A stretch of 64,000 nt of DNA from IMG/VR virus record IMGVR_UViG_3300037116_000299, positions 62,001-126,000 of that record; one strand, 5' to 3'. The position numbers and the translations under genes were made by a program. Below are positions 5,039-37,776 of this stretch, piece by piece (position 1 is the stretch's first letter; each line of letters opens with the position of its first letter). The notes below the pieces were generated by a model. That model worked only from the letters and a program-made list of their open reading frames with translations, was not told the origin of the DNA and ran no database searches.

Positions 5039-5674
5039 TTAGGCTGCGACCTGGACGGCCGCGGCAATCTCGACCTCCAACAGAGGACACTTGCAGGCGA
5101 GTAGTTTGGCTTTACAGCCGTTGCAGAGGGCGAAGCCTTCCTTGTCGACCCGAAGCGGCTTGGGCTCGTCGAGCAGGCCAATCCGGAACAACTGACCGGC
5201 GGTGACCTTGCCTTTCGCGCCTGGCTTGGTCGGCATGGGAGCAAAGATATCGGCGATAATCCGGCCGTTGAGCGCCTCGTGGCACAGGAAATCAGCTTCC
5301 TTGTTGGTCTCGCGGTGATCCCAGTGCACCTTCATCGGCATCGGAATCCGCCGGCGCAGTTCCCACGCAGTCTCGCGCAGCTCATTCAACCGCGCATCCT
5401 TGCATTCGAACTTGCCCATCAGCTGGTTTGAAACCAGCTGCGAGTCCAGGTTGAACTGGAGCGCGTCGACGTCCGGATACTTGTCGAGGATTGTGGGTAA
5501 CGCATGCATGGCCAGGACTACACCCTGCCACTCCGCTACGTTGCTGGTGCCTTCAAGTATGCGGTTCTGAGCCGCAACGAAGGTGCCGTCTTCGAGCCGG
5601 GCTACGAAGGCGGCCGCGGCTTTGCGTTCGGCAGTGGTCCCGCCACCGCCGTCGGTATTGATGAATAGCTTCAT
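5039..5674 (-). CDS. rnhA: ribonuclease HI (archaeal-like type) with C-terminal Cys-rich tail
   Basis: TDGG, SNVAEW, LDSQLV and RETNKEADFL catalytic motifs. Confidence 0.85.
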   Translation of the reverse strand: MKLFINTDGGGGTTAERKAAAAFVARLEDGTFVAAQNRILEGTSNVAEWQGVVLAMHALPTILDKYPDVDALQFNLDSQLVSNQLMGKFECKDARLNELRETAWELRRRIPMPMKVHWDHRETNKEADFLCHEALNGRIIADIFAPMPTKPGAKGKVTAGQLFRIGLLDEPKPLRVDKEGFALCNGCKAKLLACKCPLLEVEIAAAVQVAA

Positions 5675-6207
5675 GCTGCTTTCAACATCGCAATCTCGCG
5701 GCGGGCGTACTGCTTCCGCGTCTTCAGGAACTTGTCGAAGGCAAGCTTGCGGGTGATTCCCTTCAGCGAGTCGATGATGCACTTGCCGGCCAGGTGATCG
5801 ACCTCGTGCTGGATAGTCCGAGCTTCCAGACCCTCGGCGATGATCGTGATGACCTCGCCATCCAGATTGTTGGCAGTAACCTCGATCTCATCGGAGCGCA
5901 ACATGCGGATCTCCATCCCAGGCATGCTCAGGCAACCTTCTTTGCCCCAGGTGCGCTCGGTGCTGAAGTCGATGATTACTGGGTTGATCAGGGCCTGCAG
6001 GGCGCCGCCGGATGTCTCGCGGTAGACAATGACCTGGGCATTGATGCCCAACTGATTGGCAGCCAAACCGTAGGCCTTGTGCTTCTCGCAGACAGCTTTC
6101 ATGTTCTCGACCAGCTCGGCGATGATGGGCATATCTTCGGGCACATCCACAGGAGCACAACGGGTCAGAAGCATGGGATCGGGGTACTCGATCAGCGAAT
6201 AGTTCAT
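5671..6207 (-). CDS. def: peptide deformylase
   Basis: Motifs GLAANQLG, EGCLS and QHEVDHL. Confidence 0.95.
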   Translation of the reverse strand: MNYSLIEYPDPMLLTRCAPVDVPEDMPIIAELVENMKAVCEKHKAYGLAANQLGINAQVIVYRETSGGALQALINPVIIDFSTERTWGKEGCLSMPGMEIRMLRSDEIEVTANNLDGEVITIIAEGLEARTIQHEVDHLAGKCIIDSLKGITRKLAFDKFLKTRKQYARREIAMLKAA

Positions 6208-6512
6208 TTCTTCTCCAGGGTGTCAACCAGATTCTCGAAGACGTTCTCTACAGCGCGCACACCTGCGAAGAAGTGCGGAGCCTTTTCTGGCGGGGTTCGA
6301 TCGCTATCAGGGCCTGCGCCCACGTGCAGGGTGTCCATCAGGCCGATGCGGATCTTGGTGGCGGCATAGTAGTCCAATGCTCTTTGAAGGCGGGCTCTCA
6401 CGGCAGAGACATCCTTGATGTCAGAAGCCGGTCCGCGCAACATCTCCTTGAACTGTTCCGGTCGACTCTCGATCAACGCGATGACCGCGTTCAGTGCAGT
6501 GTTCAAACTCAT
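6204..6512 (-). CDS. hypothetical protein
   Basis: ORF with ATGA overlap to def. Confidence 0.6.
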   Translation of the reverse strand: MSLNTALNAVIALIESRPEQFKEMLRGPASDIKDVSAVRARLQRALDYYAATKIRIGLMDTLHVGAGPDSDRTPPEKAPHFFAGVRAVENVFENLVDTLEKK

Positions 6513-6525
6513 GGGAATCCTTTCG

Positions 6526-11719: not shown

Positions 11720-11793
11720 TGGTTGGGGAGCAGGGATTCGAACCCCGATCGAGCGCGTCAGAGGCGCTTGTCCTACCGTTGAACGACTCCCCA
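11720..11793 (-). tRNA. tRNA-Gln(CTG)
   Basis: Cloverleaf TGGGGAG/CTCCCCA, anticodon arm AGCGC-CTCTGAC-GCGCT, GTTCGAATC, encoded CCA. Confidence 0.92.
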
Positions 11794-11802: not shown

Positions 11803-12264
11803 TTAGCGGATGATTCCGTACAGGTCGAGATGACCGATCGCAGGATCTACCTGCGCAAAGGTCGTCGGCACCGTGCAGATCGCTGTCATGACGCGGCCCT
11901 TCGTTCCATAGAACTCTGGGTTGACATCGGAGAAGGTGAAAACCGTAACCAATTCACCAAGCTCCTTGAGGACCTTGGCCAATTCCCGACTATTCCGAAC
12001 CGACAGGACGATGGTAGTCATCTCCCGATAGCCTTCATGCCAGTTCTCGTTGCGGAGGAGCAACCTGGGTTCAGCCGGAGTGCAGGAAAGATGCTCGTTC
12101 TCCATCTTGCGGGCGACATGCGCAACCTGAGCCATCAAACGGCCAGGTTCCATCGGGATACGGGTGGTGACGGTGGCCTTGCGTTCCTTGGTCGTAACGA
12201 GCACCGATTCAGGCACGATCACATAAATGCGCGGGGGCTCCGGCAGTAACTTCTTCTTCTTCAT
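11803..12264 (-). CDS. pth2: peptidyl-tRNA hydrolase, Pth2 family
   Basis: MEPGRLMAQVAH, TIVLSV, D...EF..T..TAIC pattern. Confidence 0.8.
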   Translation of the reverse strand: MKKKKLLPEPPRIYVIVPESVLVTTKERKATVTTRIPMEPGRLMAQVAHVARKMENEHLSCTPAEPRLLLRNENWHEGYREMTTIVLSVRNSRELAKVLKELGELVTVFTFSDVNPEFYGTKGRVMTAICTVPTTFAQVDPAIGHLDLYGIIR

Positions 12265-13089: not shown

Positions 13090-13580
13090 GCGTGAGGTCG
13101 CTAATCGACCACCACGAGGGAGGAAGGCTCCCGGGCTTTCACCGGGATGCAGGCGACTGAGTATTCAAGTTCAACCCTTACTTGATGCCTTGTTAGGCAG
13201 CAGCGAGATACGCTGCCTCGAATGCCGCGGCCGGAGCCGGGAAAGCGAGGACTTCTGCGGTCTTGCTGGCGAGGTAACCCGTGGTGTTGGCAGTTATTCG
13301 TCGTGGTCTCCCATATCGCGGGCGGCCGACTCGGCGCGTCACCATCTTGTTCCGTATCCCGTCGAAGCCGTGACGGGCCCACCTCAAAGCTCTTGTCCTA
13401 TTGGGACAGTGGTTCAAAAGAGCGTCGAGGTGGACCCGGCGGGAGTCGAACCCGCGTCCGAAACGAAGAAGAAGATGTGTGTCTTTTCACGAGCGTTTTA
13501 GTCCATCCGTTTCCAGCGGACCAAACCCCATTGCTGGGGAAACTTGTTATGTCCACCTCCAGAGAATCGCATCGGGAAAG
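13090..13580 (-). ncRNA. ssrA: tmRNA, circularly permuted two-piece gene (acceptor piece ~13580-13431, spacer 13428-13381, coding piece 13380 to ~13090; outer ends approximate)
   Basis: 3' tmRNA end GGACGCGGGTTCGACTCCCGCCGGGTCCA lies upstream of the 5' end GGGCCCGTCACGGCTTCGACGGG; G3-U70 pair; ATAACT-GCC resume site; tag ends in YLAAA*. Confidence 0.9.
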
Positions 13581-14326: not shown

Positions 14327-14529
14327 TTGGCGCCGCGAGAACTGAACGGAAATGTGGTCATGTCCGCGGCATCTTCGTTGGGTTCAATTCCAGAATGATT
14401 TGACCGGATTCGAATCCCCGCAGCGCATCCTTTAGGCTGTTCTTTGACCCCTGACACCGGATTGGGGCGGCGAGCCCCTCCTGTACATTCGATTGCACTA
14501 TGAGCGATCTACATCCGATATTCCAGCAC

Positions 14530-15426
14530 CTATCGTAGAACCCACCATGGATTCTCCGTGATTCCGTCAGGAAGGTGCTTCAGGCTGTGGATGGCGATCC
14601 TGAAAAGGATATTGGAGACTGGGCCGCCTCCTAGGATTAACGTGCCCAGGAGAAAGGATCCCACTCTTTTTCCGGTGCTTATGCCCGCGCTTTGCGTAAG
14701 GGATACGTTCTTTAGGGACATCTCAACTCCATACATCAGGGCCGCTACTCCTCCAAAGCCAAAGCTTATAGTCCATCCCTCTGTCCACGCATCAGAAAAC
14801 CAGAGGCTTGGATGGATGAGCACATATCCTGTGCTTATCAACTCCAACCAAATGTAATAGACCCCTGTAGGCACAATCGAAATCCATGCGTACAGCGCCA
14901 GCCACAGCCACAACCAATGGCGATGACGGATTCCAGTGAGCACGTCCATAAACTCAGCGTCTGTTCGCGCGTTCTTTCCCAATGCAGTTCCAATAAGCCC
15001 AGACAGTAACGTCAACGCCGCCATTCCGAGAATGAACTGCCCCGTCGTTGGAACATAGCCGAATATTGAGACCGAAGAGGAGACATCACTCGGAACGAAG
15101 TGAAGTAGTGAGAGCATACCTCCCGAGAGGATTAGGGACGAGACAATGCCCACGACCCACGGGCCCCTTTTTACAAGAGTTACCGCAACAGCAACTCCGA
15201 TGCTTATTCCGACAGCCCACATCAGATTGGTCACGGCCTCATAGTCGTCTGGGCTACCTTCATGCAGAAACCTAAAGCCCATCGTCATTGCCCCAGCTGC
15301 CGCCATGCCGTACCAGATGGCAATCAGCAATGAGGCGATAGGATGTAAGCCTTCGGGCTCAGCGCGCGAGGGATCCTGAAAGATAGGAGCGGATTCGACT
15401 GCGGATGTATCGCCCGTTCTGTCCAT
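14530..15426 (-). CDS. multi-pass membrane protein
   Basis: About seven hydrophobic segments; start MDRTG with GGAG SD. Confidence 0.7.
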   Translation of the reverse strand: MDRTGDTSAVESAPIFQDPSRAEPEGLHPIASLLIAIWYGMAAAGAMTMGFRFLHEGSPDDYEAVTNLMWAVGISIGVAVAVTLVKRGPWVVGIVSSLILSGGMLSLLHFVPSDVSSSVSIFGYVPTTGQFILGMAALTLLSGLIGTALGKNARTDAEFMDVLTGIRHRHWLWLWLALYAWISIVPTGVYYIWLELISTGYVLIHPSLWFSDAWTEGWTISFGFGGVAALMYGVEMSLKNVSLTQSAGISTGKRVGSFLLGTLILGGGPVSNILFRIAIHSLKHLPDGITENPWWVLR

Positions 15427-15437
15427 TAAGGAATCTC

Positions 15438-15800
15438 CTATGACAAGTCCAGCTTCTTCGGCACTATTAAGCTGTATATGACCCAAACAACAAAGAAAGC
15501 CCCTGTCAATACATTGACAATCTCCCAATCCGATCTCGACATGCGGACTGGTAACAGAGGATTGAACAGAACGGCGATCGCACCAAATACCCAGACCCAA
15601 AGAAGGTTTCCTTCTGCGTGGCGCTTGGTTGCGGCGAATGCTGAGGCCATGCAGATTAGAAGCCTCAGAAGGACATAAAACGCGTAGGGCCACCGAGTAG
15701 CCGCCGCGGTGAACAGAACAAGGGCACAGATTCCCAGCAATGCGGTCTCGCCTTTGATGAGGCTATCCCCTGGCGCGCCTTGTTTATCCGATCCTGTCAT
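15438..15800 (-). CDS. DUF6804-like small membrane protein
   Basis: WPYAFYVLLR...LFNPLLPV...RSDW pattern. Confidence 0.65.
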   Translation of the reverse strand: MTGSDKQGAPGDSLIKGETALLGICALVLFTAAATRWPYAFYVLLRLLICMASAFAATKRHAEGNLLWVWVFGAIAVLFNPLLPVRMSRSDWEIVNVLTGAFFVVWVIYSLIVPKKLDLS

Positions 15801-15896
15801 CTTCAGGGCCTATCCTCTTCTACGAAGATTCGCACAGATTGTAGCGCGCTCCTCGATCTCGCGACATCTCGACCTGCTATTGTCCTGGTCGGCTGA

Positions 15897-16154
15897 TTAA
15901 TCGTCACTCGATGCTCGCGATCCGGCGCCCAATATCACGAGAATGCATACGACCAAGTGAACCCAGAACCACGCACTAAGACCCTGGTCGGAATAGATCA
16001 TCACCAGGATTATCAATCGGGGGAAGAACATCCAGCTAAGTGCTGCCCACGGCTGGCCGAATGGCATCGGCATATTCTGCCACCATTCAATGAAGAGGCT
16101 GATCCTTGGCAGAAAGAGGCTGACAATCAGGAACCAAATCGGCAGATCGTACAT
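15897..16154 (-). CDS. small membrane protein
   Basis: Three hydrophobic helices with LPRI/FPRL repeats. Confidence 0.65.
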   Translation of the reverse strand: MYDLPIWFLIVSLFLPRISLFIEWWQNMPMPFGQPWAALSWMFFPRLIILVMIYSDQGLSAWFWVHLVVCILVILGAGSRASSDD

Positions 16155-16417
16155 TGGTCGCTCACTATTCGACTATTCTGGTGCGCGGAGCCTAGCCGAG
16201 GGGTTCAAATCCCCAGCATTAGGCTGATTTTGAACTCTTTGCCTCTTAGAGAATTGATGATGTCGACAACCATTAGTTACTTCCTTCCTTGTGGGATGCC
16301 GAGATCAGGCCGTATTCCATCATCACGTTGCGACGAATGCGCGCGCAATCCCATCCGCTATTAGCGGATGGATGCCCTCATTGTGATCAACGTATATAGT
16401 GCTTACTGCGCTGGCAA

Positions 16418-18205
16418 TCAAGCTCGGGCCTCAAGTGACTTGGCTAGTATCTCTAACTGTCTGATGAAGACCCGCCGACCTTTCTTCTCTTGCAATCCTG
16501 CGCGTATTTCACGCTGAGTCGCAGCGTAGTCGCCTTGCTCGAAGTGGTATCGGGCCAATTCTAGATGCATTTTCTGCCTTACTTGTCGAGCTAGATCTCG
16601 TCTTGAAGTCTTGGCCGCCATATTCTCAGCACGTTTGTACAACCGGCGGCCTGCCTCATAATCTCCTTCCCTCAGGTGCAGAAGACCTATAGTCGCAATC
16701 AACTCAACATGGTCATCAACGTTCCTTGGCCTGGAGTCTAGAACATGTTTGGCCTGAGCAGTCTGACCTTCCATTAGCAAGAAATAGGATAAGTTGTTGA
16801 TGATGGAGAAAGACTTGGGATATTGAGCATATCCCTCCATCAACAGTTGGATCGCCTTCTCTCCAAAACCAGCTTCACCGTAATAGCTTCCGAGCGATGC
16901 ATAGTTGTCAGCAGAAAGCGGGCCGAACGTTCGTAGTGCTTCAATCTGCAAGATTGCTTCTGGGTAATTATCTTGTTCAGCATAAAAGATGCTTAAGAGT
17001 GAGCGCGTTTCTCGACTAGAAGGGAACAGTTCGACCGCGTGCTCCAATACCTTTATAGCGAGAGGCTTTCTGCTCGTTAGCCCATACACGCGAGCCAAAT
17101 TGTCATACGGGATATGAGAGTTTCTCGGCGCTTTCTCAATTGCAAGCTTCAGTTCGACAACGGCTCTATCAAAAGACTTCTCATGTACGAAAGTTACCGC
17201 GATGTTTGAATGGGCGCGCCCAACCTCATCGCTGGAAAGCGTATCCCCTCCCAACTCGAGAATTCTTACGATTTGCGATCTTGCCATCGAATGCCGCTTC
17301 GATTGCATGTAGGCAGCAGCCAACTGATCACGCGCTTGTATATCCGCTGGATGCCGTTCTACGAAATCTTGCAACATTTCAATCGCTTGATCAGATTTAT
17401 CAAACGTGAGCAAAGTTCCGGCGAGGCTGATCACGGTTGTCGCTGAGTCAGGCGCCAAAGCGAGGGCCGTCTTGAATGCCTTTTCAGCACGAGAATGATC
17501 ACCCTGAAGAGCGTACGCGACTCCCATTGAGTGGTAGAGCTGCGGGCTGCGAAAGTCCAAATGTGAGGCGGCACGAAACTCATTCAATGCACGGCGAAGG
17601 TCCGACCTCTGGAGACACATGATGCCTAAGAGGAAGCGCACATACGGATCGCGTGGACTAAGAGTTGCCGCCTTTGAGAGATGTGTGTTTGCATCTTCGA
17701 AGCGTCCTGCCTGAATTAGGACGTTTGATAATCCGACTTCGACAGCTGGGTTATCAGGGTAGGTAGCAAGCAATTTCTCATACCAGCGTTCCGCCTCAAC
17801 CGTACGTCCCGCTTCGAAATGTAACCGAGCGAGAGTTATGCTGGCCAGGTAGTTTCCTGGGTCAAGTTCCAAGGCGGTTTCTAATTCCTTCAAGGCCTCA
17901 TCGGGTTGACCCTGCTTCAAGAGAGCAATCCCAAGATTTGCATGTGCGCGACCACTACGTGGGAAGCGATCGCTGTGCCGACGCACCGATCGCTCAATAC
18001 CCGCGAGAATATTCTCTGCCGAAGGCGTAGTAGCGCCCACACCCTCTTTCGGCCAATCGATTTCGACAGACTGATCGCCTCTCCGGCTAACCGAGGCGGC
18101 TGTCCCGGGCAGCAACACATTTGTCGAAGGAGCGCTTAGGTCAAATCGCTCGGGGATCGTGCTCTTCTCAAATTCTCGAAGTTCGTCTTTGGAAGCTGTA
18201 TTCAT
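16418..18205 (-). CDS. tetratricopeptide-repeat protein
   Basis: Many TPR units (AHANLGIALLKQGQPDEA; YHSMGVAYALQGDHSRAEKAFKTALALAP); ATGA overlap with kinase. Confidence 0.9.
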   Translation of the reverse strand: MNTASKDELREFEKSTIPERFDLSAPSTNVLLPGTAASVSRRGDQSVEIDWPKEGVGATTPSAENILAGIERSVRRHSDRFPRSGRAHANLGIALLKQGQPDEALKELETALELDPGNYLASITLARLHFEAGRTVEAERWYEKLLATYPDNPAVEVGLSNVLIQAGRFEDANTHLSKAATLSPRDPYVRFLLGIMCLQRSDLRRALNEFRAASHLDFRSPQLYHSMGVAYALQGDHSRAEKAFKTALALAPDSATTVISLAGTLLTFDKSDQAIEMLQDFVERHPADIQARDQLAAAYMQSKRHSMARSQIVRILELGGDTLSSDEVGRAHSNIAVTFVHEKSFDRAVVELKLAIEKAPRNSHIPYDNLARVYGLTSRKPLAIKVLEHAVELFPSSRETRSLLSIFYAEQDNYPEAILQIEALRTFGPLSADNYASLGSYYGEAGFGEKAIQLLMEGYAQYPKSFSIINNLSYFLLMEGQTAQAKHVLDSRPRNVDDHVELIATIGLLHLREGDYEAGRRLYKRAENMAAKTSRRDLARQVRQKMHLELARYHFEQGDYAATQREIRAGLQEKKGRRVFIRQLEILAKSLEARA

Positions 18206-19332
18206 GAATTTGCTCCAGTCGTCAGAGTATTTTGCAGTCGCGACTGCTTCAACTCCGGAACTTTCCGATATGCTTTCTTGCGTTCGATCCAGCGAGCATA
18301 TGCGGCTTGATTCTTGAGGACCACCAGGCACTGATTAATCTGCAGGAACGTGGACGTGCAGTCTTTGGCACGTTGGCGGTAATCCAGTGCAGCAAGCGCC
18401 CTATACATACGATTAAGAATTGGAGCGATTGAGCGCGGCACAGCGGCACCGAAGTCCCGCACATCAGGGAGAGGAAATCGATTGGATATTGACCCAACCC
18501 CCTTATGGAATTCGTTCACTTTGTCGCCAGGAAGAATCGATCCTATAACCATATTGAGATCCATCAACATGTTTCTGCTAAACAGATGAAGGTTCAACGG
18601 AGTACCTGTGAACATCTCGAACAGTACAGCTCCCAAGGCGAACATGTCTCCGGCATATGCAATGTCTGGCAAAATGTCGTGGAGCGACGCCACCATCTCT
18701 AAGGGTGCGTACGTCCAGTCGCCTGGAGGTCCCGTGTACCGCTTTAATGGCCCCCTCGAGTCTGTCAATGAACGGGCTGTACCGAAGTCGGACAACCGTA
18801 GAGTGCCGTCCGTCATGACGAGAAAGTTTGACGGCTTAATGTCGCGATGGACGATTCCTTGCCGATGTATCCTCTGGACCGCTCTGCAAATCGTCCGAAA
18901 GTGAAGAAGTTTATCCGCAGGGTCAATGTCATATGTGTCTAAGACTGTTCCGAGATCGCAAGAAGCCAATTCCATTGCATAGAACCTGAGCGTAACCGGA
19001 AGAATCATCCCCAAAGGATGTTGGAATGGTTCAACTATCTGCTGCATATCCGAATATCGCCGTAAGATGTCTGGCTGATCTTCTAAACCACCCAAAACCT
19101 CGACTTCCCTCGTGAATGATTCGAGCCGATAGGGATCAATAACGGAAGGATCGAAGAACTTGAGCGCCACCTTCTGTCCAGTTACTTGGTCGTGTGCTTC
19201 GAAAAGCAAGGAAAAGGTACCGCCACCGCCGGTGACCCCCAACCGTTTCATGTTGGTGAATCGACCGCAGAGTTCGGTCTTGCTTTCGATCAAACTAAGA
19301 AACGGCTCAGGGTTTGAGCTCGGATTTGCCAT
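18202..19332 (-). CDS. Hanks-type Ser/Thr protein kinase
   Basis: GGGGTFS, VALK, HRDIKPSN, DFG, YAPLE, DMFALG. Confidence 0.93.
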   Translation of the reverse strand: MANPSSNPEPFLSLIESKTELCGRFTNMKRLGVTGGGGTFSLLFEAHDQVTGQKVALKFFDPSVIDPYRLESFTREVEVLGGLEDQPDILRRYSDMQQIVEPFQHPLGMILPVTLRFYAMELASCDLGTVLDTYDIDPADKLLHFRTICRAVQRIHRQGIVHRDIKPSNFLVMTDGTLRLSDFGTARSLTDSRGPLKRYTGPPGDWTYAPLEMVASLHDILPDIAYAGDMFALGAVLFEMFTGTPLNLHLFSRNMLMDLNMVIGSILPGDKVNEFHKGVGSISNRFPLPDVRDFGAAVPRSIAPILNRMYRALAALDYRQRAKDCTSTFLQINQCLVVLKNQAAYARWIERKKAYRKVPELKQSRLQNTLTTGANS

Positions 19333-19615: not shown

Positions 19616-19782
19616 GGGCTAAAGATACACTGGGTTGATATAAATGTCAACCCAGATTGTATGCCCTCGATACAAGGCCCCGTACCTCGGTTCGAGTCGG
19701 GCTTGCGAACTCCTTTGGGTTCAGATTCGGGGGTTCAATTCCAGTCCTTTGAGCTTGATTGGAAACGTCTTGTAATGCTCTC

Positions 19783-24067: not shown

Positions 24068-24153
24068 TGGCAGGGGTGACAGGATTCGAACCTGCAGTGA
24101 CTTGCGTCGGCGGTTTTGGAGACCGCTGGGCCGAACCGTTGCCCCTCACCCCT
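24068..24153 (-). tRNA. tRNA-Trp(CCA) with long variable arm
   Basis: AGGGGTG/CACCCCT, G73, CCA; GCGGT-CTCCAAA-ACCGC; variable arm GAC-GCAA-GTC. Confidence 0.82.
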
Positions 24154-24402: not shown

Positions 24403-24479
24403 TGGTGGCGGTGCGTGGACTTGAACCACGGACCTCGACGTTATGAGTGTCGCGCTCTAACCAGCTGAGCTACACCGCC
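24403..24479 (-). tRNA. tRNA(CAT), Met or Ile2
   Basis: GGCGGTG/CACCGCC acceptor, loop CTCATAA, CCA. Confidence 0.9.
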
Positions 24480-24681: not shown

Positions 24682-24757
24682 TGGCTGACGAGGCAGGGGT
24701 CGAACCTGCGACCAACGCCTTAACAGGGCGCCGCTCTACCAACTGAGCTACTCGTCA
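24682..24757 (-). tRNA. tRNA-Asn(GTT)
   Basis: TGACGAG/CTCGTCA, G73, GCGCC-CTGTTAA-GGCGT, CCA. Confidence 0.92.
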
Positions 24758-26071: not shown

Positions 26072-26073
26072 GG

Positions 26074-26298: not shown

Positions 26299-26312
26299 CT
26301 CATTCTCCTAGT

Positions 26313-26436
26313 GGGGCCGGGCAGGATTCGAACCTGCGACCTACGGGTTTGCTCGGCTTTAGCCAGTTGCTGGTTGACCCAACGTGTGGATTGCCTTCAG
26401 TTGGCCCGCTGTTCTAACCGCTGAACTACCGGCCCC
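26313..26436 (-). ncRNA. tRNA-like RNA with a 57-nt structured insert replacing the anticodon loop
   Basis: Intact acceptor, D, anticodon-stem and T arms; insert at 26348-26404; no encoded CCA. Confidence 0.8.
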
Positions 26437-26441
26437 ATGAA

Positions 26442-29749: not shown

Positions 29750-30847
29750 TTACGGGGAGGACTTGAAGAATTGGGAGAGAGGAGTCCACGTTCGAGAGAC
29801 AGTGGCTCTGCAGAACTCCAGGATGCGAACAATACTCCACCTCTGTCTGAGGACGTCGGAGTAGAAATAACCCAACCAGCCAAGGAGCCAGACTTCCAGA
29901 TCCAATTGCAGCTCTGGTGTAAGTTCTGGTAACTCCGAGATGCCACGCATTCCTTCGAGTGTGGCCAGACTGGTTTCAATCTGGGTTAGTACCTGCTGAT
30001 AGGGGATCTCCCCGAGTCTCACTTGGCGCAGGTAAGTGCGCAGCGGGTCAGGAAGCGGAAACGTCAGTTTCCCGGTCGCGAGTAGGGTGATTCCCTCGTT
30101 CACGATACGGAGAGCATGAGACGTGGCCTTCCAGTCCACGTTGCTCTCTGACGCCTGCTTAGCGCGGCTGCCAAACTTGGCGAGCAGAGCCTCTGCAGTT
30201 TGCAGGTTGTAGCGGAAGCTCGACGTATAGGGCAGGATCTTGTCGAGCAGTTTGATGCAGGGGCGCATGGCGCCCTTACCGGAGGCATCGTACTCCGTAA
30301 CGTGGAAGTATTCCGGAAACTCCTTCTCAATCAACCGCGCCTTCTCTTCAAGGAACGGCTGGACCATGAACAAACGCTCATCGGCCCGGAAGCCTTTGAG
30401 CAGTTCGATGGTGGCGAGCACAGCATTCAGCCGCTCGCCCTTCAAGGAGTACAAACCAGCCTGATCCGCACAGTACCGGGCAATCGCCCGGATCTGTGAG
30501 GTCAGAAAGCGCTCGCGCAGTTCATGACAGAACTGGCGGAACCGTGGATCGTAGATCGTCTGCTCGGCCCCATTGAAGTCGACAGCGAACACCAACTCCA
30601 GGGCATAGCTCTGACCGCCCATGAAGTCCCGCGCCAGGATGTGGAGCGGGATGTTCTCGACATCAATGTGCTCGGCCGAGTTCTTTCCGGTGCCGGTCTT
30701 GGTGGACCGGTACTTGTTCTTGGGCGCACGGCCCAGCAGGAGATCCGAGAACTTCGGCAGGATCACGTGCTTGATGTCACGGTCAGAGGTAGGAATGGTC
30801 GTGCCGTACAGGCTCGACCCGTACAGGCAACTAAAGAGGGTTCGCAA
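29750..30847 (-). CDS. DNA polymerase beta-superfamily nucleotidyltransferase
   Basis: YGSSLYGT...SDRDIK and DWKATSHALR motifs. Confidence 0.82.
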   Translation of the reverse strand: MRTLFSCLYGSSLYGTTIPTSDRDIKHVILPKFSDLLLGRAPKNKYRSTKTGTGKNSAEHIDVENIPLHILARDFMGGQSYALELVFAVDFNGAEQTIYDPRFRQFCHELRERFLTSQIRAIARYCADQAGLYSLKGERLNAVLATIELLKGFRADERLFMVQPFLEEKARLIEKEFPEYFHVTEYDASGKGAMRPCIKLLDKILPYTSSFRYNLQTAEALLAKFGSRAKQASESNVDWKATSHALRIVNEGITLLATGKLTFPLPDPLRTYLRQVRLGEIPYQQVLTQIETSLATLEGMRGISELPELTPELQLDLEVWLLGWLGYFYSDVLRQRWSIVRILEFCRATVSRTWTPLSQFFKSSP

Positions 30848-31190
30848 CGACAACCTCCTGGGAAAGATGGGAGTCAATCCCCTTCTGGATATTGGCGACG
30901 GGCTGCATCCCGGTCAGAGTAGCCAGCTTGTTCTCGCCGTCGAACAGGATCAGGGTAGGAACCCCGCGGACGTTGTAGGAAGCTGCCCGGTGATTGGTCA
31001 GGTCGACGTCGTAATAAAGCACGTTGACCACGCCGGCGTTCTGCTTGGCGATGACCTCGACATTCACTCGGATCTGCTCGCACGGGCCACACCACGCCGC
31101 TCCGAAAAGCACCAGGGTAAGGCCATCCGCTTTGCCTACGGCGTCCGACCAGGTGGTGTCGGTCACGCTTCCAATCAGGCTCTTCGCCAT
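30831..31190 (-). CDS. trxA: thioredoxin
   Basis: WCGPC active site, VRGVPTL. Confidence 0.92.
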   Translation of the reverse strand: MAKSLIGSVTDTTWSDAVGKADGLTLVLFGAAWCGPCEQIRVNVEVIAKQNAGVVNVLYYDVDLTNHRAASYNVRGVPTLILFDGENKLATLTGMQPVANIQKGIDSHLSQEVVVANPL

Positions 31191-32050: not shown

Positions 32051-32052
32051 GT

Positions 32053-33004: not shown

Positions 33005-34213
33005 TTATGCTGCGATGAGGTGAGTGGGCTTGTCCTCGCCCTGGCCATCGATGTAGAAGACGTCCCGGCCGTGAGGCCGAACGATCTTCCAGAGAGCCTC
33101 ATGGGCCTCCCAGATCCGGTTGTCCATCATCATCATGGCGATCGGGCCCAGGACCATGTCCCGTTCGATCACCAGGCGATAGAACTCCCGGTCATCCTTG
33201 ACCTCGGCGCGCAATGGTGTAATCCAGGCCAGAACATCCAGCGCCTTACAGATCTGGAAGTGAAAAGCCTGATAGAGTCTCCTCTGCCATTCCTCGATCC
33301 AGGTCTTGAAGTGAGGCGGCAACTGCGACTGCAGGTGCGTCGGCCTCAACCATGGCTTGAGCGGATCGCCCATCTGTTCCCAGATCATCTGGGGCGTCAC
33401 ATTGGTGACCAGGCGATGCAGCCGGAGATACTCCTCGAGCTTGATCTTCACCTTGAGCGGGGGTTGTCCGCCGCGGCGGACTGAGACCACATAACCCTCA
33501 CGGGTCAGGTCCTTATCCTGCCTGCAGGCCATCAGAGTCTTACCCGAGAAGGCAGGCACTACGCGGCACCATGGTTTCCCCTTGGCGCCTGCGTTCAGCT
33601 CCTTCCAGAGGCCTTCCAGTTGCCAGTGGCGCAACTCGTCACCGGTGTCGTTCATGACGGTCGTCAAAAGCACCAGGGCCTCGTAGTCGTAAGGAATCAC
33701 GATGCGGAGATGCTTGGCGACGATCTCAACGATCAAGGTCAATCCCTTGGGGATGCACTCGACCATGCCATACTTGACGAACTTCTGGAACTTGGCAGTC
33801 GCCCAGATCGCGCCGTCCGAGGTGAACGACCCGCGGGTGGCCACACCCCAGTGCTCCTTGTAGTTCCAGACGATGCCCATCTGGCCATCGATTTTGTCGG
33901 TGAACTCCAGCTCGTTGCCGTAGGCCCGGGCAATGCCCAGGACGAACTCCTCTGAGAATTCCAATAGTCCTTGGCCAACGATGTCGACCGTCTGGCCCAG
34001 GTTGAAGAACTTCGGTTGCGGACGCGCGATGACCTCATCGGTATCATCGATGATCAGACCGCGGCAGAAGCAGATCTCCGTGCTCCAACGCTCATCGATC
34101 GTAGCCTTATGGGTATAGTTGAAGATCCGTAACGGCAGAGTCGGGTGGTGTTGAATACCGATGTAACCATTGGCGATCTCCTGCTTGAGTGCGTCCGTCC
34201 AAATCATCTTCAT
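33005..34213 (-). CDS. T4 Rnl1-like RNA ligase
   Basis: CRGLIID, ARPQPKFFN, motif I KIDG, ATRGSFTS, EGYVV, KVKIK..EY.RLH. Confidence 0.9.
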   Translation of the reverse strand: MKMIWTDALKQEIANGYIGIQHHPTLPLRIFNYTHKATIDERWSTEICFCRGLIIDDTDEVIARPQPKFFNLGQTVDIVGQGLLEFSEEFVLGIARAYGNELEFTDKIDGQMGIVWNYKEHWGVATRGSFTSDGAIWATAKFQKFVKYGMVECIPKGLTLIVEIVAKHLRIVIPYDYEALVLLTTVMNDTGDELRHWQLEGLWKELNAGAKGKPWCRVVPAFSGKTLMACRQDKDLTREGYVVSVRRGGQPPLKVKIKLEEYLRLHRLVTNVTPQMIWEQMGDPLKPWLRPTHLQSQLPPHFKTWIEEWQRRLYQAFHFQICKALDVLAWITPLRAEVKDDREFYRLVIERDMVLGPIAMMMMDNRIWEAHEALWKIVRPHGRDVFYIDGQGEDKPTHLIAA

Positions 34214-34977
34214 ATTCGTGTCTGCCCCTTTGCGTGGCGAATGACCTTGTTCCCGTACGGGCTCATCTTCTGTTCCTGAGCTGTCAGGTCGTACTTGTGA
34301 TCCTTCCAGGCCTCGCATGCATGAACAGTTTCAGCATGAACATGGCCATCCGGGATGTCGCCAAACCAACGCCTCACGTGGCACCCACAGGCCAGTCGGG
34401 CCTCAATGCACATCGTCACGACTCGGCGAGTGGCCTTGATCTTGAGCTTGGGACGACGCGGACACTTGTTCAAATGCTTGAACAGAGGTGTCCTGTCTAA
34501 GACCGCACCGCAGTGCGGGCAGTGCTCTCGGCAGCCCTTCATCAGGCGGCCGCGGGTGTGGTGTTGATGGTGTCCAGCATGCCGCCGAACCGCTCCATCA
34601 GCGTCTGGGGACGCGTGCCGCGGGATGCAGCTGCTACCAGTCGGAGTTCGATTGCACCCTGGTCAAAGGTCACGATCTCGTCAGCAGACGAGGGTTGGGG
34701 TGCCATGTTGTGTTCGAGATACTCTTCACGAGCCTCCGCAGAGGCGAATCCAGCGAAACTACGGTTGTCCATGTTGCTCCTTCGGTCGTCGGTGCCAGAG
34801 CCTCAATATCCATGCAGGAATGAAGGCTCCTTTCTTGTGTGCAGATACGCGAAGCGGTATGTGCAGGTCATCGGCGATCGCTCGGATCGCCGCGTAAGCG
34901 GGATGCTCCCGGAATTCCTTGATCGCCGATTCTTCGCTATCGGCGATGCCCTCGATGAGGATCATGCGGATCTCCAT
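34210..34977 (-). other. three short hypothetical genes (34210-34542 Zn-finger-like, 34542-34772, 34759-34977)
   Basis: Coupled ORFs between RNA ligase and CCA enzyme. Confidence 0.5.
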
Positions 34978-36266
34978 TAGGAGACCGCCATTGGCGAGTT
35001 CCGAAGCTGTGTCGTTACAAACGCCACGGCTTCCTCACGCGTTTTGATCTTCTCTTCGAGCTGTTCGTCCTCGAGATTGTGCAGAACGAAGCCGAACGCA
35101 GGACTGGGCTTATAACCCAGGGCAATCAAGTCATCGCCGTTGAGCAGTACCTTGGGATAAGTCCCAGGCAAACCCGCCGCGCTCATGAACTGATCCACAC
35201 GATGAAATGCCCGTTGGCCCCCGGTGTAAGCCGGCCGCGCGAAGTAATCGTGCAGCGCCACCTGACGAATCAGGTCATAGTCCGCATCGCGGCGATAGCG
35301 CCGCTGTGCTGCCAGGTTCCAGTCCGGGATGCAGCTCCAAACCTGTGCCTTGGTGATGATGTTAGTGATCTGGGCAGCATCCGCCGTCGAGAACTTCAGA
35401 CCCAGCAGCGCGTTCTTCCGTGCCGTGGTGCCGAGATCCAGGAACAGCAGAGACAATGCGATCAGGACGTGATCCTTGACGGCCTGACCGTAGGCGCTGG
35501 ACCAGGAGATTGCAGGCATCTGGTTGAGGCGACGCAGAACCCTTCCGAAGTCGGTATCTAGCTCCGGCAGCAGGTAGTCCAGCAGGTTCGAGAGCAGAAG
35601 CAGTTCCAGGGCGCGTACGGCCCGGGGCTGGCTCAGCATCGCGATCAGCTCCTCGCGCTTCCGTTCTCCGCTGATCTCAGCGAGTAAGGGAGCATTGACG
35701 CGCATCGCGCCCCAGGTGGGCTCGTCAATCTGGAAGTCCAGCCGGGCGGCAAATCGGATTGCCCGGAGTAAACGCAGGGCGTCTTCTTCAAAGCGCCGGT
35801 TGGGATCCCCGATGCAGCGGATCTTCTTGTGCGCGATGTCCATGACTCCGCCGGTGAGATCCACCAGCTCACCGGTCTCGATGTCCAGGGCCAGGGCATT
35901 GATGGTGAAGTCCCGCCGCTGAACGTCCTCGGCCAGGGTCTTGCTGTAGACCACAGCGTCAGGGTGACGGTGGTCAGAATAGGCGTCCTCGGCGCGGAAG
36001 GTGGCGACCTCGAAACTCTCCTCATTGATCGTGACGAGAACGACGCCAAACTTAGCGCCTACGGGCTTGGAGCAATCTGGGAAGATTGCCATGACCTCGT
36101 CAGGCACTGCGTTGGTGACGATGTCATAGTCTTTGGGGAGATTGGCCAGGATACGATCTCGAACGCAACCGCCGATCAGGTAGGCTTCTTTGCCGGCCTT
36201 GCGTAGGTGGTAGATCAGCTTCTCGACCGCGACCATACGGACGGTCGGTTGCATTCTGAGGATCAT
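34977..36266 (-). CDS. cca: CCA-adding tRNA nucleotidyltransferase (class II)
   Basis: GGCVRD, KDYDI, EVATFR, RRDFTINA, EDALRLLRAIRF. Confidence 0.92.
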   Translation of the reverse strand: MILRMQPTVRMVAVEKLIYHLRKAGKEAYLIGGCVRDRILANLPKDYDIVTNAVPDEVMAIFPDCSKPVGAKFGVVLVTINEESFEVATFRAEDAYSDHRHPDAVVYSKTLAEDVQRRDFTINALALDIETGELVDLTGGVMDIAHKKIRCIGDPNRRFEEDALRLLRAIRFAARLDFQIDEPTWGAMRVNAPLLAEISGERKREELIAMLSQPRAVRALELLLLSNLLDYLLPELDTDFGRVLRRLNQMPAISWSSAYGQAVKDHVLIALSLLFLDLGTTARKNALLGLKFSTADAAQITNIITKAQVWSCIPDWNLAAQRRYRRDADYDLIRQVALHDYFARPAYTGGQRAFHRVDQFMSAAGLPGTYPKVLLNGDDLIALGYKPSPAFGFVLHNLEDEQLEEKIKTREEAVAFVTTQLRNSPMAVS

Positions 36267-36561
36267 GATTGTTTCACTTTCGGACGAGACATCATCGTTC
36301 GCCGGCAGGGACCGATGAACCAGGACCGGTCGAGTTTGTAGATCAACATGCCGTTTTCACGACAGCATAACTTACGCTCCACAATGGCTCCGTACCCGAG
36401 GCTTCGCGCGAGCCGCTTGGCTCGCTGAATCGTTCGGACTGTACGGAGAGGCGCGTTAGCGCCAGGTGAGAAGACGTCATAACGAAGGGAGCGTTTTGAT
36501 TCTCTGGACAATTCAACTTCCCTAACTGGCGCCGGGGATTAGCCGACGCCTTGGATTTGAC

Positions 36562-37776
36562 CTACTCGAGGTCGGTATCGGAGCAGCGGACGGGAATGAC
36601 CCGTACGCCATGTTCACGCCACATCTGAACCACACAGAGCCTGTCGTCAATCGCAAATGCGATCTCCGCTTTGCAGGCCAGCATCTGTTCGAGGATCGTG
36701 GCTTTCACATCGACATCGGTGATGTGGGCCGGTTCTTTGCGCATGAACAAGTGGTCGAACGGCACCATGTGTTTGTCCAGCGACTCCAGGGTCTCGCGAC
36801 CACAGCAGTTCATGTCGCGGCCGCTGACCAGGATGATCATGAAGCCCAGGGCACTGAGAGAGTGCAGCCAGTTCAGGATGATCTCGACCGGTTCGTCGTT
36901 GATGCACTCCTGCAGGAACTTGTAGTGATCCTTCTTGGCTTTGCCTGTGCCCTGGCAGATCCCGCATGGCATAGCGCCCGGGTCGTCCAATGCCTTCCCG
37001 GTGCCATAACATGGAGTGCAGATCCCGCTCACCAGGTGCTTCCGGTGATCCAGGTTGAACAGCGTGCCGTCGAGGTCACAGACCACAGCCGGATGGCCGC
37101 TCAGATCCAGGCGCCCGCTCAGAAGGTACTGCCGCTCGATCACCGGGCGGCCGACCTGTCTGCCTTCGAAGCGCATGGCGTCGCGGGCAATGCAATCCGC
37201 GATCGGGGTGTCGATGAACTTCACCTCGGCCTTGCGGAAGCACAGCTCTTCGGCGTAATCGAGCCACATCTGCCGGTGACCCGGGGTCAGGTTGGTGTCG
37301 TCGATGATGACATCCCTACCCTGTTCCCGCGCCGCACGGACAATGGCCTTCTCAGCCTCGATGATGAACTTCTCCTTCGAGGCAGCCCAACGAGGGATGG
37401 TCATCCGACGGATGTCGTCCCGGTTGATCCGGACCGCATGCCCGTTGTCCTGGATGTGCTTGAACGCAACCGTGGACTTGCCGCTCCCGGAAGGGCCGGA
37501 CAGGATGGTCATTCGGCCAATTGGAGTCGTGCCGACCTTCAGGAAGATCGCCTTCTCTGCCTCATGTGTCAGCTCACCGCCAACCAGTCTAAGACCAGTC
37601 GCACCATCGGGTAACACGTGACGGATGCCTTCCGGCGTCATCACGTATTCGTACGCCCCGTAGGGCTCGCCGATGGCTTTTACGTCGAGGAACGTGCCGC
37701 CAAAGTAGTCCGGGATCTCGATCCGGCCGGTCTTGAATGTTGCTGGTCTCATTACTCGTACCTCGTTGCTGTTCAT
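36562..37776 (-). CDS. pseT: polynucleotide 5'-kinase/3'-phosphatase (T4 PseT-like) with inserted Zn finger
   Basis: GPSGSGKST, NRDDIR, IIDDTNL; HAD motifs DLDGT, SGR and IDDR. Confidence 0.88.
   Translation of the reverse strand: MNSNEVRVMRPATFKTGRIEIPDYFGGTFLDVKAIGEPYGAYEYVMTPEGIRHVLPDGATGLRLVGGELTHEAEKAIFLKVGTTPIGRMTILSGPSGSGKSTVAFKHIQDNGHAVRINRDDIRRMTIPRWAASKEKFIIEAEKAIVRAAREQGRDVIIDDTNLTPGHRQMWLDYAEELCFRKAEVKFIDTPIADCIARDAMRFEGRQVGRPVIERQYLLSGRLDLSGHPAVVCDLDGTLFNLDHRKHLVSGICTPCYGTGKALDDPGAMPCGICQGTGKAKKDHYKFLQECINDEPVEIILNWLHSLSALGFMIILVSGRDMNCCGRETLESLDKHMVPFDHLFMRKEPAHITDVDVKATILEQMLACKAEIAFAIDDRLCVVQMWREHGVRVIPVRCSDTDLE

What the first reader, a model, noticed from the sequence alone, without database searches (positions are those of the whole stretch)
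5671..37776. Integrated translation-rescue and tRNA-repair system paired with non-canonical CCA RNAs
Seen in one region: def, Pth2, permuted tmRNA, SpoU methylase, ASCH-like protein, histidine phosphatase, Pol-beta nucleotidyltransferase, Rnl1, CCA enzyme, PNK/phosphatase, six intact tRNAs and several tRNA-like RNAs. Known: T4 Pnk plus Rnl1 heals tRNAs cut by anticodon nucleases, and tmRNA and Pth recycle stalled ribosomes. Inference: a system that keeps translation running against tRNA- and mRNA-cleaving host defences by combining repair enzymes with decoy or mimic RNAs. The decoy-RNA part appears undescribed.
Basis: inference. Interest (0 to 1): 0.72.

Follow-up and report, generated by a model that had tools for sequence, protein, structure and literature searches.

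The report
Prophage tRNA-repair genes, tRNAs and two-piece tmRNA
A roughly 210-kb prophage of a soil Acidobacteriaceae bacterium carries the already-described jumbo-phage toolkit for mending cut tRNAs and freeing stalled ribosomes, loosely gathered rather than one integrated system, and nothing supports the proposed decoy RNAs.

Summary
The peptide deformylase, PTH2, permuted tmRNA, SpoU methylase, histidine phosphatase, Pol-beta nucleotidyltransferase (T4 NrdC.11/RlaP type), Rnl1, CCA-adding enzyme and Pnkp all match their families. Six tRNAs with encoded CCA are present. The ASCH protein was not found. "Several tRNA-like RNAs" comes down to two: a tRNA-His-like gene with 3 of 7 acceptor pairs broken, and a 124-nt tRNA-like gene with a 57-nt anticodon "loop".

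The repair-plus-rescue idea is already published for jumbo phages (Iyer et al. 2021). Only Pnkp, CCA enzyme, Rnl1 and RlaP form a tight 8-kb cassette. The rest of the 32 kb is mixed with unrelated genes and a 5.4-kb low-GC island that matches a candidate defence system. In other phages these parts lie scattered or occur alone.

No evidence supports decoy RNAs. The 124-nt RNA has no relatives, and only its unspliced form was found in metatranscriptome contigs.

New context:
- The element is a prophage integrated next to a tRNA-Arg gene in an Acidobacteriaceae host.
- Its two-piece tmRNA belongs to an unannotated group in Acidobacteria and soil phages with 27-33-residue tags, while the hosts have one-piece tmRNA.

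Verdict: a new member of a known kind, of modest interest.

The parts
5671..6207 (-). Peptide deformylase (def)
   Evidence: Pfam PF01327 133 bits; NCBIfam TIGR00079 108 bits, above its cut-off
11720..11793 (-). tRNA-Gln(CUG), CCA encoded
   Evidence: ARAGORN; Rfam 58 bits; 3' end ACCA
11803..12264 (-). PTH2-type peptidyl-tRNA hydrolase
   Evidence: Pfam PF01981 27.9 bits against a cut-off of 23; NCBIfam equivalog well below its cut-off
13102..13521 (-). Circularly permuted (two-piece) tmRNA gene. Tag is ANTTGYLASKTAEVLAFPAPAAAFEAAYLAAA. The acceptor piece ends ...GGGUCCACC, with the last A of CCA not encoded.
   Evidence: ARAGORN calls it permuted; Rfam RF04321 68.7 bits against 47; homologues in Tunturi_5, Tunturi_4 and IMG/VR contigs; acceptor stem with G3:U70 and compensatory changes
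14380..19744 (.). Low-GC (about 51-53%) inserted island: 387-aa protein, TPR protein, Ser/Thr kinase and HTH regulator. It is flanked by an exact 14-nt direct repeat, GGGTTCAATTCCAG. It is not part of the repair set.
   Evidence: Composition; codon-usage scores; direct repeat D9; Pfam; PADLOC PDC-M71A/B and PD-T4-6
19784..19857 (-). tRNA-His(GUG)-like gene with 3 of 7 acceptor pairs mismatched and no encoded CCA; probably a decaying tRNA
   Evidence: Rfam 48.9 bits with three non-pairs marked; sequence
20311..20385 (-). tRNA-Glu(UUC), CCA encoded
21109..21186 (-). tRNA-Gln(UUG), CCA encoded
22724..23317 (-). SpoU-class RNA 2'-O-methyltransferase, target unknown
   Evidence: Pfam PF00588 54 bits; only weak TrmJ/RlmB similarity
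23314..24045 (-). Histidine phosphatase (branch 1), overlapping the SpoU gene by 4 nt
   Evidence: Pfam PF00300 118 bits; NCBIfam hits all below their cut-offs
24068..24153 (-). tRNA-Trp(CCA) with an unusually long (about 13-nt) variable arm, CCA encoded
24403..24479 (-). tRNA-Met(CAU), elongator-like, CCA encoded
24682..24757 (-). tRNA-Asn(GUU), CCA encoded
26311..26436 (-). 124-nt tRNA-like RNA gene. The acceptor stem (8 bp, G-1:C73), D arm and T arm are canonical, but the anticodon stem closes a 57-nt loop (a 50-nt insertion). No CCA is encoded.
   Evidence: Rfam tRNA 55.8 bits with 56 inserted nt; ARAGORN intron mode; fold; no homologue elsewhere; unspliced in a metatranscriptome contig
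29750..30877 (-). Pol-beta nucleotidyltransferase of the T4 NrdC.11 / RlaP type
   Evidence: phrog_388 E=3e-52; tblastn to nrdC.11 of Vibrio phage nt-1, 35% identity, and to Tunturi_5 gp36, 45%; PF10127 only 13 bits; T4 NrdC.11 is listed as an RlaP (PMC12776372)
32053..32991 (-). 312-aa all-helical protein of unknown function next to Rnl1
   Evidence: 176 representative clusters, no Pfam/PHROG/NCBIfam match; AlphaFold pLDDT 85.5; no structural match
33005..34318 (-). Rnl1-family RNA ligase
   Evidence: Pfam PF09511 34 bits; phrog_562 E=3e-42; motifs KIDGQ, EGYVV and KVKIK aligned to T4 Rnl1
34977..36266 (-). Class II tRNA nucleotidyltransferase, probably CCA-adding
   Evidence: Pfam PolyA_pol 132 bits; NCBIfam CCA model 270.6 bits against 290; best PDB matches are CCA-adding enzymes, E=2e-50, with motifs GGCVRD, DYD, RRDFTINA and EDALRLLRAIRF
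36562..37776 (-). Pnkp: polynucleotide 5'-kinase / 3'-phosphatase
   Evidence: Pfam AAA_33 plus HAD_PNKP; aligned to T4 Pnkp and Pnkp1 with GPSGSGKST, RDD and DLDGTL

Best explanation
The window is the early or auxiliary arm of a roughly 210-kb temperate myovirus-like prophage of an Acidobacteriaceae (Granulicella-like) soil bacterium. Within it, an 8-kb same-strand cassette encodes a T4-style RNA repair pathway.

Inferred pathway:
- Pnkp removes the 2',3'-cyclic or 3'-phosphate and phosphorylates the 5'-OH of a cut tRNA.
- The NrdC.11/RlaP-type nucleotidyltransferase can put back one or two lost 3' nucleotides.
- Rnl1 seals the break.
- The class II nucleotidyltransferase rebuilds damaged or missing CCA ends. 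These include the three phage RNAs whose CCA is not, or not fully, encoded.

Separately, and 5-25 kb away:
- Six canonical tRNAs top up or replace the host pools.
- A two-piece tmRNA, working with the host SmpB, together with a PTH2 hydrolase, frees stalled ribosomes and recycles peptidyl-tRNA.
- A deformylase supports protein maturation.

These are independent, mobile modules that have accumulated in one arm of the genome. They are not one co-evolving system. The two odd tRNA-like genes are most likely a decaying tRNA-His and an insertion-disrupted or specialised tRNA, not decoys.

Shown: the gene identities, intact motifs, arrangement, prophage status, host lineage, and distribution in other phages. 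Inferred: all activities, the substrates, and the link to host tRNA- or mRNA-cleaving defences.
For: Family matches and intact catalytic motifs. Cassette genes are contiguous on one strand with no terminator-like site between them. The published framework for jumbo phages names the same parts: tRNAs, Rnl1, PNK-HAD, RlaP, CCA enzyme and PTH2 (PMC7824862), and there is RlaP biochemistry (PMC12776372). Each part is widespread in phages: Pnkp in 1891 records, NTase in 1500, Rnl1 in 440, CCA enzyme in 382. Prophage status and host: integrase beside tRNA-Arg, and a flank protein 99% identical to a Granulicella MAG. The tmRNA is real and conserved. Modularity: the parts are scattered in Tunturi_5, the tmRNA lies beside packaging genes elsewhere, and the CCA-enzyme relatives L003-L005 share no other gene. 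An inserted island that matches a candidate defence system interrupts the span.
Against: No experiment or expression data exists; the RNA-library contigs may come from DNA. No close full-length relative of this phage was available, so conservation of the cassette order could not be tested. The RlaP Pfam model scores below its cut-off. The CCA versus A-adding or poly(A) specificity is unresolved. The roles of SpoU, the histidine phosphatase and the 312-aa helical protein are unknown. T4 Rnl1 also acts in tail-fibre attachment, so ligase function alone does not prove tRNA repair. The 124-nt RNA is intact in a strain variant about 99% identical, so it may be functional.
Confidence: 0.7

Rival explanations
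1. Supply model: the six tRNAs mainly serve translation efficiency by topping up amino acids or codons that the phage uses more than its host. The nearby enzymes are tRNA maturation helpers rather than counter-defence.
For: Phage ORFs use more Glu (54 against 40 per 1000), Trp (14.4 against 10.8), Met (23.4 against 16.6) and Asn-AAC (30 against 25) than a sample of host-lineage ORFs. His is used less, which fits a decaying tRNA-His.
Against: The most enriched codon, Lys-AAG (41 against 23), has no phage tRNA, and Gln-CAA is rarer in the phage. The host sample is small (13,083 codons from mixed MAG loci). Pnkp and Rnl1 have no role in normal bacterial tRNA maturation (established knowledge of the T4 pathway).
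Confidence: 0.35
2. One reading: one integrated system in which the odd tRNA-like RNAs act as decoys or mimics that soak up host tRNA- or mRNA-cleaving toxins while the enzymes repair the real targets.
For: Two aberrant tRNA-like genes and the tmRNA lack a complete encoded CCA while a CCA enzyme is encoded. The 124-nt RNA keeps perfect acceptor, D and T arms and is unchanged in a strain variant.
Against: No homologue of the 124-nt RNA was found in IMG/VR, host-lineage genomes or Tunturi phages. The His-like gene has a broken acceptor stem, typical of decay. Synteny of the 'system' is not conserved. No TROVE/Ro partner exists. The absence of substitutions in the variant is not significant: about 1 was expected.
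Confidence: 0.07
3. The 124-nt RNA is a precursor tRNA. Its 50-nt anticodon-loop insertion is cut out by a nuclease and the halves are rejoined by phage Pnkp and Rnl1, which would be protein-catalysed tRNA splicing in a bacterial virus.
For: Removing 50 nt after loop position 33 would leave the loop CCGCAAA with the Cys anticodon GCA (read from the sequence). Heal-and-seal enzymes of the kind used in yeast tRNA splicing are encoded 7-11 kb away.
Against: No spliced joint was seen; a 731-nt metatranscriptome contig carries the unspliced form. The resulting loop would have C33 instead of the near-universal U33. The acceptor end looks His-like (G-1:C73), not Cys-like. There is no bulge-helix-bulge motif or ribozyme match, no splicing endonuclease was identified, and the insertion folds weakly (z = -2.1).
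Confidence: 0.04

Closest known systems
Phage T4 tRNA repair (Pnkp + Rnl1, with NrdC.11/RlaP) countering the PrrC anticodon nuclease
   Same: It has a bifunctional kinase/HAD-phosphatase with P-loop, RDD and DxDGT motifs, an Rnl1 ligase with KxDG, EGYV and KxK motifs, and an NrdC.11-type NTase.
   Different: Here the genes are clustered with a CCA-adding enzyme. The host is an Acidobacteriaceae bacterium, no cognate host nuclease is known, and identities to T4 proteins are low (E about 0.003 for Rnl1 against 2c5u).
Jumbo-phage RNA-repair and ribosome-rescue repertoire (Iyer, Anantharaman, Krishnan, Burroughs, Aravind 2021, Viruses 13:63)
   Same: The same inventory appears: phage tRNAs, Rnl1, PNK-HAD, RlaP, CCA enzyme and PTH2, interpreted as a response to host attacks on translation.
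   Different: This element is a temperate prophage. It adds a two-piece tmRNA, def and a SpoU/histidine-phosphatase pair. No Ro/TROVE, RtcB-type or Thg1 component was detected by the searches run (the RtcB and Thg1 models were not searched).
Phage-encoded two-piece tmRNAs (e.g. methylophage Melnitz; 53 unique two-piece tmRNA structures among the 133 found in 402 of 18,146 phage genomes, Buchholz et al. 2022)
   Same: The ssrA gene is circularly permuted in a phage and differs in form from the host tmRNA.
   Different: It is a soil or Acidobacteria-phage group with unusually long tags (27-33 aa) that share a (V/L)L(A/T)F(P/A) core. Known permuted lineages are alpha-, beta-proteobacterial and cyanobacterial (PMC11915505). 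These genes are unannotated in Tunturi_4 and Tunturi_5, and tmRNA is not mentioned in their paper.
Phage tRNAs that bypass tRNA-targeting defences (van den Berg et al. 2023, eLife, listed; PARIS-neutralising T5 tRNA-Lys, from my own knowledge)
   Same: The phage carries its own Gln, Glu, Trp, Met and Asn tRNAs. From my own knowledge, these isoacceptors are frequent tRNase targets.
   Different: No nuclease-resistant anticodon-loop variants were demonstrated here. The decoy idea goes beyond what those papers show and is untested.

Membership tests
T4-type Pnkp | N-terminal P-loop kinase (GxxGxGKS/T, catalytic Asp) fused to a C-terminal HAD phosphatase (DxDxT) | tested here: met
   AAA_33 plus HAD_PNKP domains; GPSGSGKST, NRDD and DLDGTL aligned to 1ltq and 4xrp
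Rnl1 RNA ligase | Covalent nucleotidyltransferase motifs I (KxDG), IV (EGxV) and V (KxK) | tested here: met
   KIDGQ, EGYVV and KVKIK aligned to T4 Rnl1 2c5u/5tt6; Pfam above its cut-off; phrog_562 E=3e-42
Rnl1 RNA ligase | C-terminal domain that gives tRNA anticodon-loop specificity | tested here: inconclusive
   The alignment to T4 Rnl1 ends near residue 313 of 437. The C-terminal part was not modelled.
RlaP (PF10127) nucleotidyltransferase | Match to PF10127 at the gathering score | tested here: not met
   13.1 bits against a cut-off of 23, N-terminal motif only; no Pfam hit at E<=0.01
RlaP (PF10127) nucleotidyltransferase | Homology to the T4 NrdC.11 clade, which is counted as RlaP cluster 5 | tested here: met
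   phrog_388 E=3e-52; 35% identity, E=3e-52, to nrdC.11 of Vibrio phage nt-1; PMC12776372
Class II CCA-adding enzyme | Head-domain motifs A (GGxVRD, DxD), B (RRD) and D (EDxxR) | tested here: met
   GGCVRD, DYD, RRDFTINA and EDALRLLRAIRF
Class II CCA-adding enzyme | CCA-adding rather than A-adding or poly(A) polymerase specificity | tested here: inconclusive
   NCBIfam CCA equivalog 270.6 bits, below its cut-off of 290; PcnB model 212 bits; PDB CCA enzymes E=2e-50 against poly(A) polymerase 2e-36
Two-piece (permuted) tmRNA | Gene order 3' acceptor piece, then intervening sequence, then 5' piece plus tag ORF; Rfam RF04321 at or above the gathering score | tested here: met
   68.7 bits against 47; ARAGORN permuted, 3' domain at 55-93 and 5' domain at 142-171
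Two-piece (permuted) tmRNA | Alanine identity (G3:U70) and a tag ORF that resumes at GCC and ends in a hydrophobic Ala-rich tail | tested here: met
   Acceptor GGGCCCG/CGGGUCC with G3:U, and compensatory changes against Tunturi_4; tag ends ...AAYLAAA
Two-piece (permuted) tmRNA | Processing into two base-paired RNAs and SmpB-dependent trans-translation | not testable with these tools
   No SmpB in the phage record; the host lineage has standard tmRNA, so host SmpB is presumed
PTH2 peptidyl-tRNA hydrolase | Pfam PF01981 at the gathering score | tested here: met
   27.9 bits against 23; NCBIfam equivalog only 17.5 bits against 126
Single integrated (co-inherited) system over 5671-37776 | Gene set and order conserved in other phages | tested here: not met
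   CCA-enzyme relatives share nothing else. In Tunturi_5, def, RlaP, CCA enzyme and tmRNA lie 13 to about 195 kb apart. Related tmRNAs lie beside packaging genes. A foreign island splits the span.
Ro/TROVE with Y RNA (YrlA) tRNA-like partner | TROVE protein present and a YrlA match at the gathering score | tested here: not met
   No PF05731 hit at E<=1; YrlA 17.3 bits against 69
ASCH domain protein | Match to PF04266 | tested here: not met
   No hit in six frames of the whole record at E<=1

The most novel reading that the evidence does not exclude
The 124-nt tRNA-like RNA (26311-26436) is functional. One possibility is that it is a pre-tRNA whose 50-nt anticodon-loop insertion is removed by a cut-and-rejoin route that uses the phage's own Pnkp and Rnl1, which would be enzyme-catalysed tRNA splicing in a bacterial virus. 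The other is that it is a purpose-built bait for a host anticodon nuclease. Its canonical acceptor, D and T arms, its tight intergenic placement and its identity in a strain variant do not exclude either reading.
Probability: 0.06. Interest if true: 0.85.

Novelty: new member of a known kind. Interest (0 to 1): 0.38.

Why it matters
The main claim adds no new principle. RNA repair plus ribosome rescue in large phages is already a published concept, and this locus is a clear, compact example (Pnkp, CCA enzyme, Rnl1, RlaP) in a little-studied host phylum.

Three side results add value:
- The element is a roughly 210-kb temperate prophage in Acidobacteriaceae, the dominant bacteria of peat and tundra soils.
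- Phages of these hosts repeatedly carry two-piece tmRNAs with long tags that share a common core, although the hosts use one-piece tmRNA. This raises the question of what a phage-specified tag does.
- One tRNA-like gene with a 50-nt anticodon-loop insertion remains unexplained.

The enzymes could be tested directly as an RNA-repair set.

Tried and rejected
- Close relatives: megablast of 8 kb against the phage collection found nothing. Portal-protein relatives in IMG/VR (46-63% identity) are fragments without Rnl1, Pnkp or tmRNA, so synteny in true relatives could not be judged.
- Homologues of the 124-nt RNA: a gapped D-arm/T-arm pattern in IMG/VR returned only this phage and two false hits that span neighbouring tRNAs. 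Host-lineage genomes and Tunturi phages matched only the T arm.
- Splicing of the 124-nt RNA: contigs from four runs showed no joint that removes the insertion. The joints listed are short matches to other organisms' tRNAs.
- Ribozyme or Y-RNA reading of the insertion: no Rfam match.
- The 312-aa protein beside Rnl1: a confident helical model, but no PDB fold match, an uninformative context contig, and no Atlas lead.
- ASCH: not found.
- SmpB, RF-1/ArfB and TROVE: absent from the record.
- Host-derived origin of the tmRNA: rejected as unproven, because the T-arm identity to the host (94%) is matched by similar identity to enterobacterial ssrA fragments (91-97%).
- RF04321 hits above the cut-off in 4 of 121 Acidobacteriota genomes are cross-hits. 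Two of the three checked show tRNA-Asp followed directly by a standard tmRNA; the third is simply a standard tmRNA. The sample included one unpublished genome (G037, a sub-threshold hit). No claim here rests on it.
- Island inserted into the tRNA-His-like gene: rejected, because the direct repeat lies 40 nt outside that gene.
- Structured intergenic RNAs: the best z-score, at 19616-19725, is a palindromic operator and promoter of the island's HTH gene.

Full report
WHAT THE WINDOW IS. The window is bases 62001-126000 of a single 214.3-kb record. The record has a terminase, a portal protein, a major head protein and a tail sheath on a plus-strand late arm. A long minus-strand arm contains the finding. 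A tyrosine integrase (genome 210504-211529) lies beside a tRNA-Arg(CCG) gene (211731-211807). It is followed by cell-like genes, and the ACT-domain protein there is 99% identical to one from a Granulicella MAG and 98% to one from an Acidobacteriaceae MAG. IMG/VR classes the record as a provirus, 99% complete. So this is a roughly 210-kb temperate myovirus-like prophage of an Acidobacteriaceae soil bacterium. Identical or near-identical contigs occur in several metagenomes and in permafrost and soil RNA libraries. No close relative exists in the isolate-phage collection. The portal protein is about 30% identical to those of Bacillus phage 0305phi8-36 and Acinetobacter phage ME3.

CHECK OF THE OBSERVATION. 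All genes from 2.6 to 41 kb are on the minus strand.
- peptide deformylase 5671-6207, PTH2 11803-12264;
- permuted tmRNA 13102-13521;
- SpoU methylase 22724-23317 and histidine phosphatase 23314-24045;
- a Pol-beta nucleotidyltransferase 29750-30877 (phrog_388);
- Rnl1 33005-34318, a class II tRNA nucleotidyltransferase 34977-36266 and Pnkp 36562-37776.

Catalytic motifs are intact. Rnl1 has KIDGQ, EGYVV and KVKIK. Pnkp has GPSGSGKST, RDD and DLDGTL. The CCA enzyme has GGCVRD, DYD, RRDFTINA and EDALRLLRAIRF. Six tRNAs (Gln-CUG, Glu-UUC, Gln-UUG, Trp-CCA, Met-CAU, Asn-GUU) are canonical enough and encode CCA. An ASCH protein was not found anywhere in the record, and the 117-aa ORF beside SpoU is an orphan.

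THE ODD RNAS. Besides the tmRNA there are two.

(a) 19784-19857 is a tRNA-His(GUG)-like gene. Its D, anticodon and T arms are normal, but 3 of 7 acceptor pairs are mismatched and no CCA is encoded. The phage uses His less than its host lineage does. The simplest reading is a decaying tRNA gene.

(b) 26311-26436 is a 124-nt tRNA-like gene. It has a perfect 8-bp acceptor stem (G-1:C73) and canonical D and T arms. Its 5-bp anticodon stem closes a 57-nt loop, which amounts to a 50-nt insertion, and no CCA is encoded. It fills a 143-nt gap between two ORFs.
- The insertion has no copy elsewhere in the genome and no ribozyme or Y-RNA match. It folds only weakly (z = -2.1).
- No homologue was found in IMG/VR, host-lineage genomes or Tunturi phages.
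- A 731-nt contig from a permafrost RNA library carries it unspliced, and no joint removes the insertion. A variant strain with 18 substitutions across 24143-26500 has none in this gene, but only about one was expected.

Its function therefore remains open. Nothing supports a decoy role.

THE REPAIR CASSETTE. Pnkp, an 82-aa ORF, the CCA enzyme, three small ORFs, Rnl1, the 312-aa helical protein, three more ORFs (one a thioredoxin) and the NTase occupy 37776 down to 29750. They lie on one strand with no terminator-like site between them. The NTase is homologous to NrdC.11 of T4-like phages. T4 NrdC.11 is counted in the RlaP family, whose members add one or two nucleotides to damaged RNA 3' ends (PMC12776372). 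The Pfam RlaP model itself scores below its cut-off here.

The inferred mechanism is the T4 scheme extended. Pnkp heals the ends, the RlaP-type enzyme restores lost nucleotides, Rnl1 seals the break, and the CCA enzyme rebuilds 3' ends. The last step is also needed for three phage RNAs. The tmRNA acceptor piece ends ...CCACC followed by T, whereas its relatives encode CCA, and both odd tRNA-like genes lack CCA. The host-lineage tRNA genes that were examined encode CCA.

WHY IT IS NOT ONE INTEGRATED SYSTEM. The 32-kb span also holds an SSB, a D123-type ATP-grasp protein, a DPBB lytic transglycosylase, a LuxR-type response regulator, a thioredoxin and many orphan ORFs. It is interrupted at 14380-19744 by a low-GC island with foreign codon usage, flanked by an exact 14-nt direct repeat. 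The Ser/Thr kinase and TPR protein of that island match the candidate defence pair PDC-M71A/B, and the kinase also matches PD-T4-6.

Comparison with other phages points the same way:
- The three IMG/VR relatives of the CCA enzyme share no other gene with the window.
- In the Acidobacteria jumbo phage Tunturi_5, def (about 52 kb), the RlaP-type NTase (about 38 kb), the tmRNA (about 158 kb) and the CCA enzyme (about 234 kb) are scattered.
- In other soil viral contigs the related tmRNA lies beside small-terminase, portal, Mu-F and ferritin-like genes.

Each enzyme is individually common in phages. The concept itself is set out in Iyer et al. 2021, section 3.4.9: phage tRNAs, Rnl1, PNK-HAD, RlaP, CCA enzyme and PTH2 as answers to host attacks on translation.

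THE TMRNA. ARAGORN and Rfam both call a permuted gene. The 3' acceptor piece is followed by a 48-nt intervening sequence, then the 5' piece with a tag ORF of 32 residues. Host-lineage genomes have standard one-piece tmRNAs with 9-residue tags. Four of 121 sampled Acidobacteriota genomes gave permuted-model hits above the cut-off. The three whose loci showed a tmRNA all carry a standard one-piece gene, two of them directly after a tRNA-Asp gene. The sample includes one unpublished genome, G037, on which nothing here depends.

Tunturi_5 and Tunturi_4 carry permuted tmRNAs (86.4 and 79.2 bits) in unannotated gaps. Their paper does not mention tmRNA. A pattern scan of IMG/VR found more:
- AKNTDSAKNAKVLAFPARPAVALQMAA
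- ASKTDSPKMGKLLAFAAKSAPALQMAA
- ATLKSVGTKFAKLLTFPVSEPVALPMAA

These share a (V/L)L(A/T)F(P/A) core with this phage's TAEVLAFPAP. The acceptor stems keep G3:U70 and show compensatory changes. Phage two-piece tmRNAs are known (PMC9004378), and the permuted lineages recorded so far are alpha-, beta-proteobacterial and cyanobacterial (PMC11915505). The origin of this group cannot be settled, because the tRNA-like domain is nearly universal.

ALTERNATIVES. A supply role for the tRNAs has partial support from codon and amino-acid usage. It does not explain Pnkp and Rnl1. The decoy and splicing readings are not excluded but have no positive evidence.

VERDICT. The locus is a new member of a known kind. 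It comes with an unexplained tRNA-like gene and a modestly interesting phage tmRNA group.

Noticed in passing
genome 210504-214300 (outside the window; locus L034): A tyrosine integrase lies next to tRNA-Arg(CCG), followed by host-like genes. The ACT protein there is 99% identical to one in a Granulicella MAG. The roughly 210-kb phage is therefore an integrated prophage of an Acidobacteriaceae bacterium, a rare case of a temperate jumbo-size phage.
   Followed up: partly
window 14380-19744: A low-GC island with foreign codon usage is flanked by the exact 14-nt direct repeat GGGTTCAATTCCAG. It encodes a Ser/Thr kinase and a TPR protein that match the PADLOC candidate defence pair PDC-M71A/B (the kinase also matches PD-T4-6), an HTH regulator with a palindromic operator, and a 387-aa unknown protein. 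It is probably a prophage-borne defence or exclusion module.
   Followed up: partly
L138 6004-6300 (Tunturi_5), L139 2971-3380 (Tunturi_4), L145, L162, L164 and others: Unannotated permuted tmRNA genes with 27-33-residue tags that share a (V/L)L(A/T)F(P/A) core occur in isolated Acidobacteria phages and soil viral contigs. In Tunturi_4 the gene lies directly after an RF-1-domain (ArfB-like) gene.
   Followed up: partly
window 24068-24153: The tRNA-Trp(CCA) has a roughly 13-nt variable arm with a small hairpin, which is unusual for a Trp tRNA. Its T arm is identical over 16 nt to that of the 124-nt tRNA-like gene.
   Followed up: no
window 8389-9591: A D123/Cdc123-type ATP-grasp protein (Pfam 82.8 bits) lies in the same arm. 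Its role in a phage is unknown.
   Followed up: no
window 32053-32991: A 312-aa all-helical protein beside Rnl1 belongs to a family of about 176 sequence clusters with no annotation and no structural match.
   Followed up: partly
window 12283-13011 and 5039-5782: A complete LuxR-type response regulator (receiver plus GerE domains) lies immediately downstream of the tmRNA on the coding strand. An RNase H-like (RVT_3) protein lies immediately downstream of def, overlapping its end.
   Followed up: no
genome 1401-6263 (locus L016): At the left end of the record there is a restriction-modification-like set: a T5orf172/ResIII helicase and Eco57I/MmeI-type methyltransferases.
   Followed up: no
window 26104-26188: In run X4 a strain variant shows 10 substitutions within 85 nt of the 74-aa ORF just downstream of the 124-nt RNA. 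The tRNA cluster carries only one 1-nt deletion, in a spacer at 24528.
   Followed up: no
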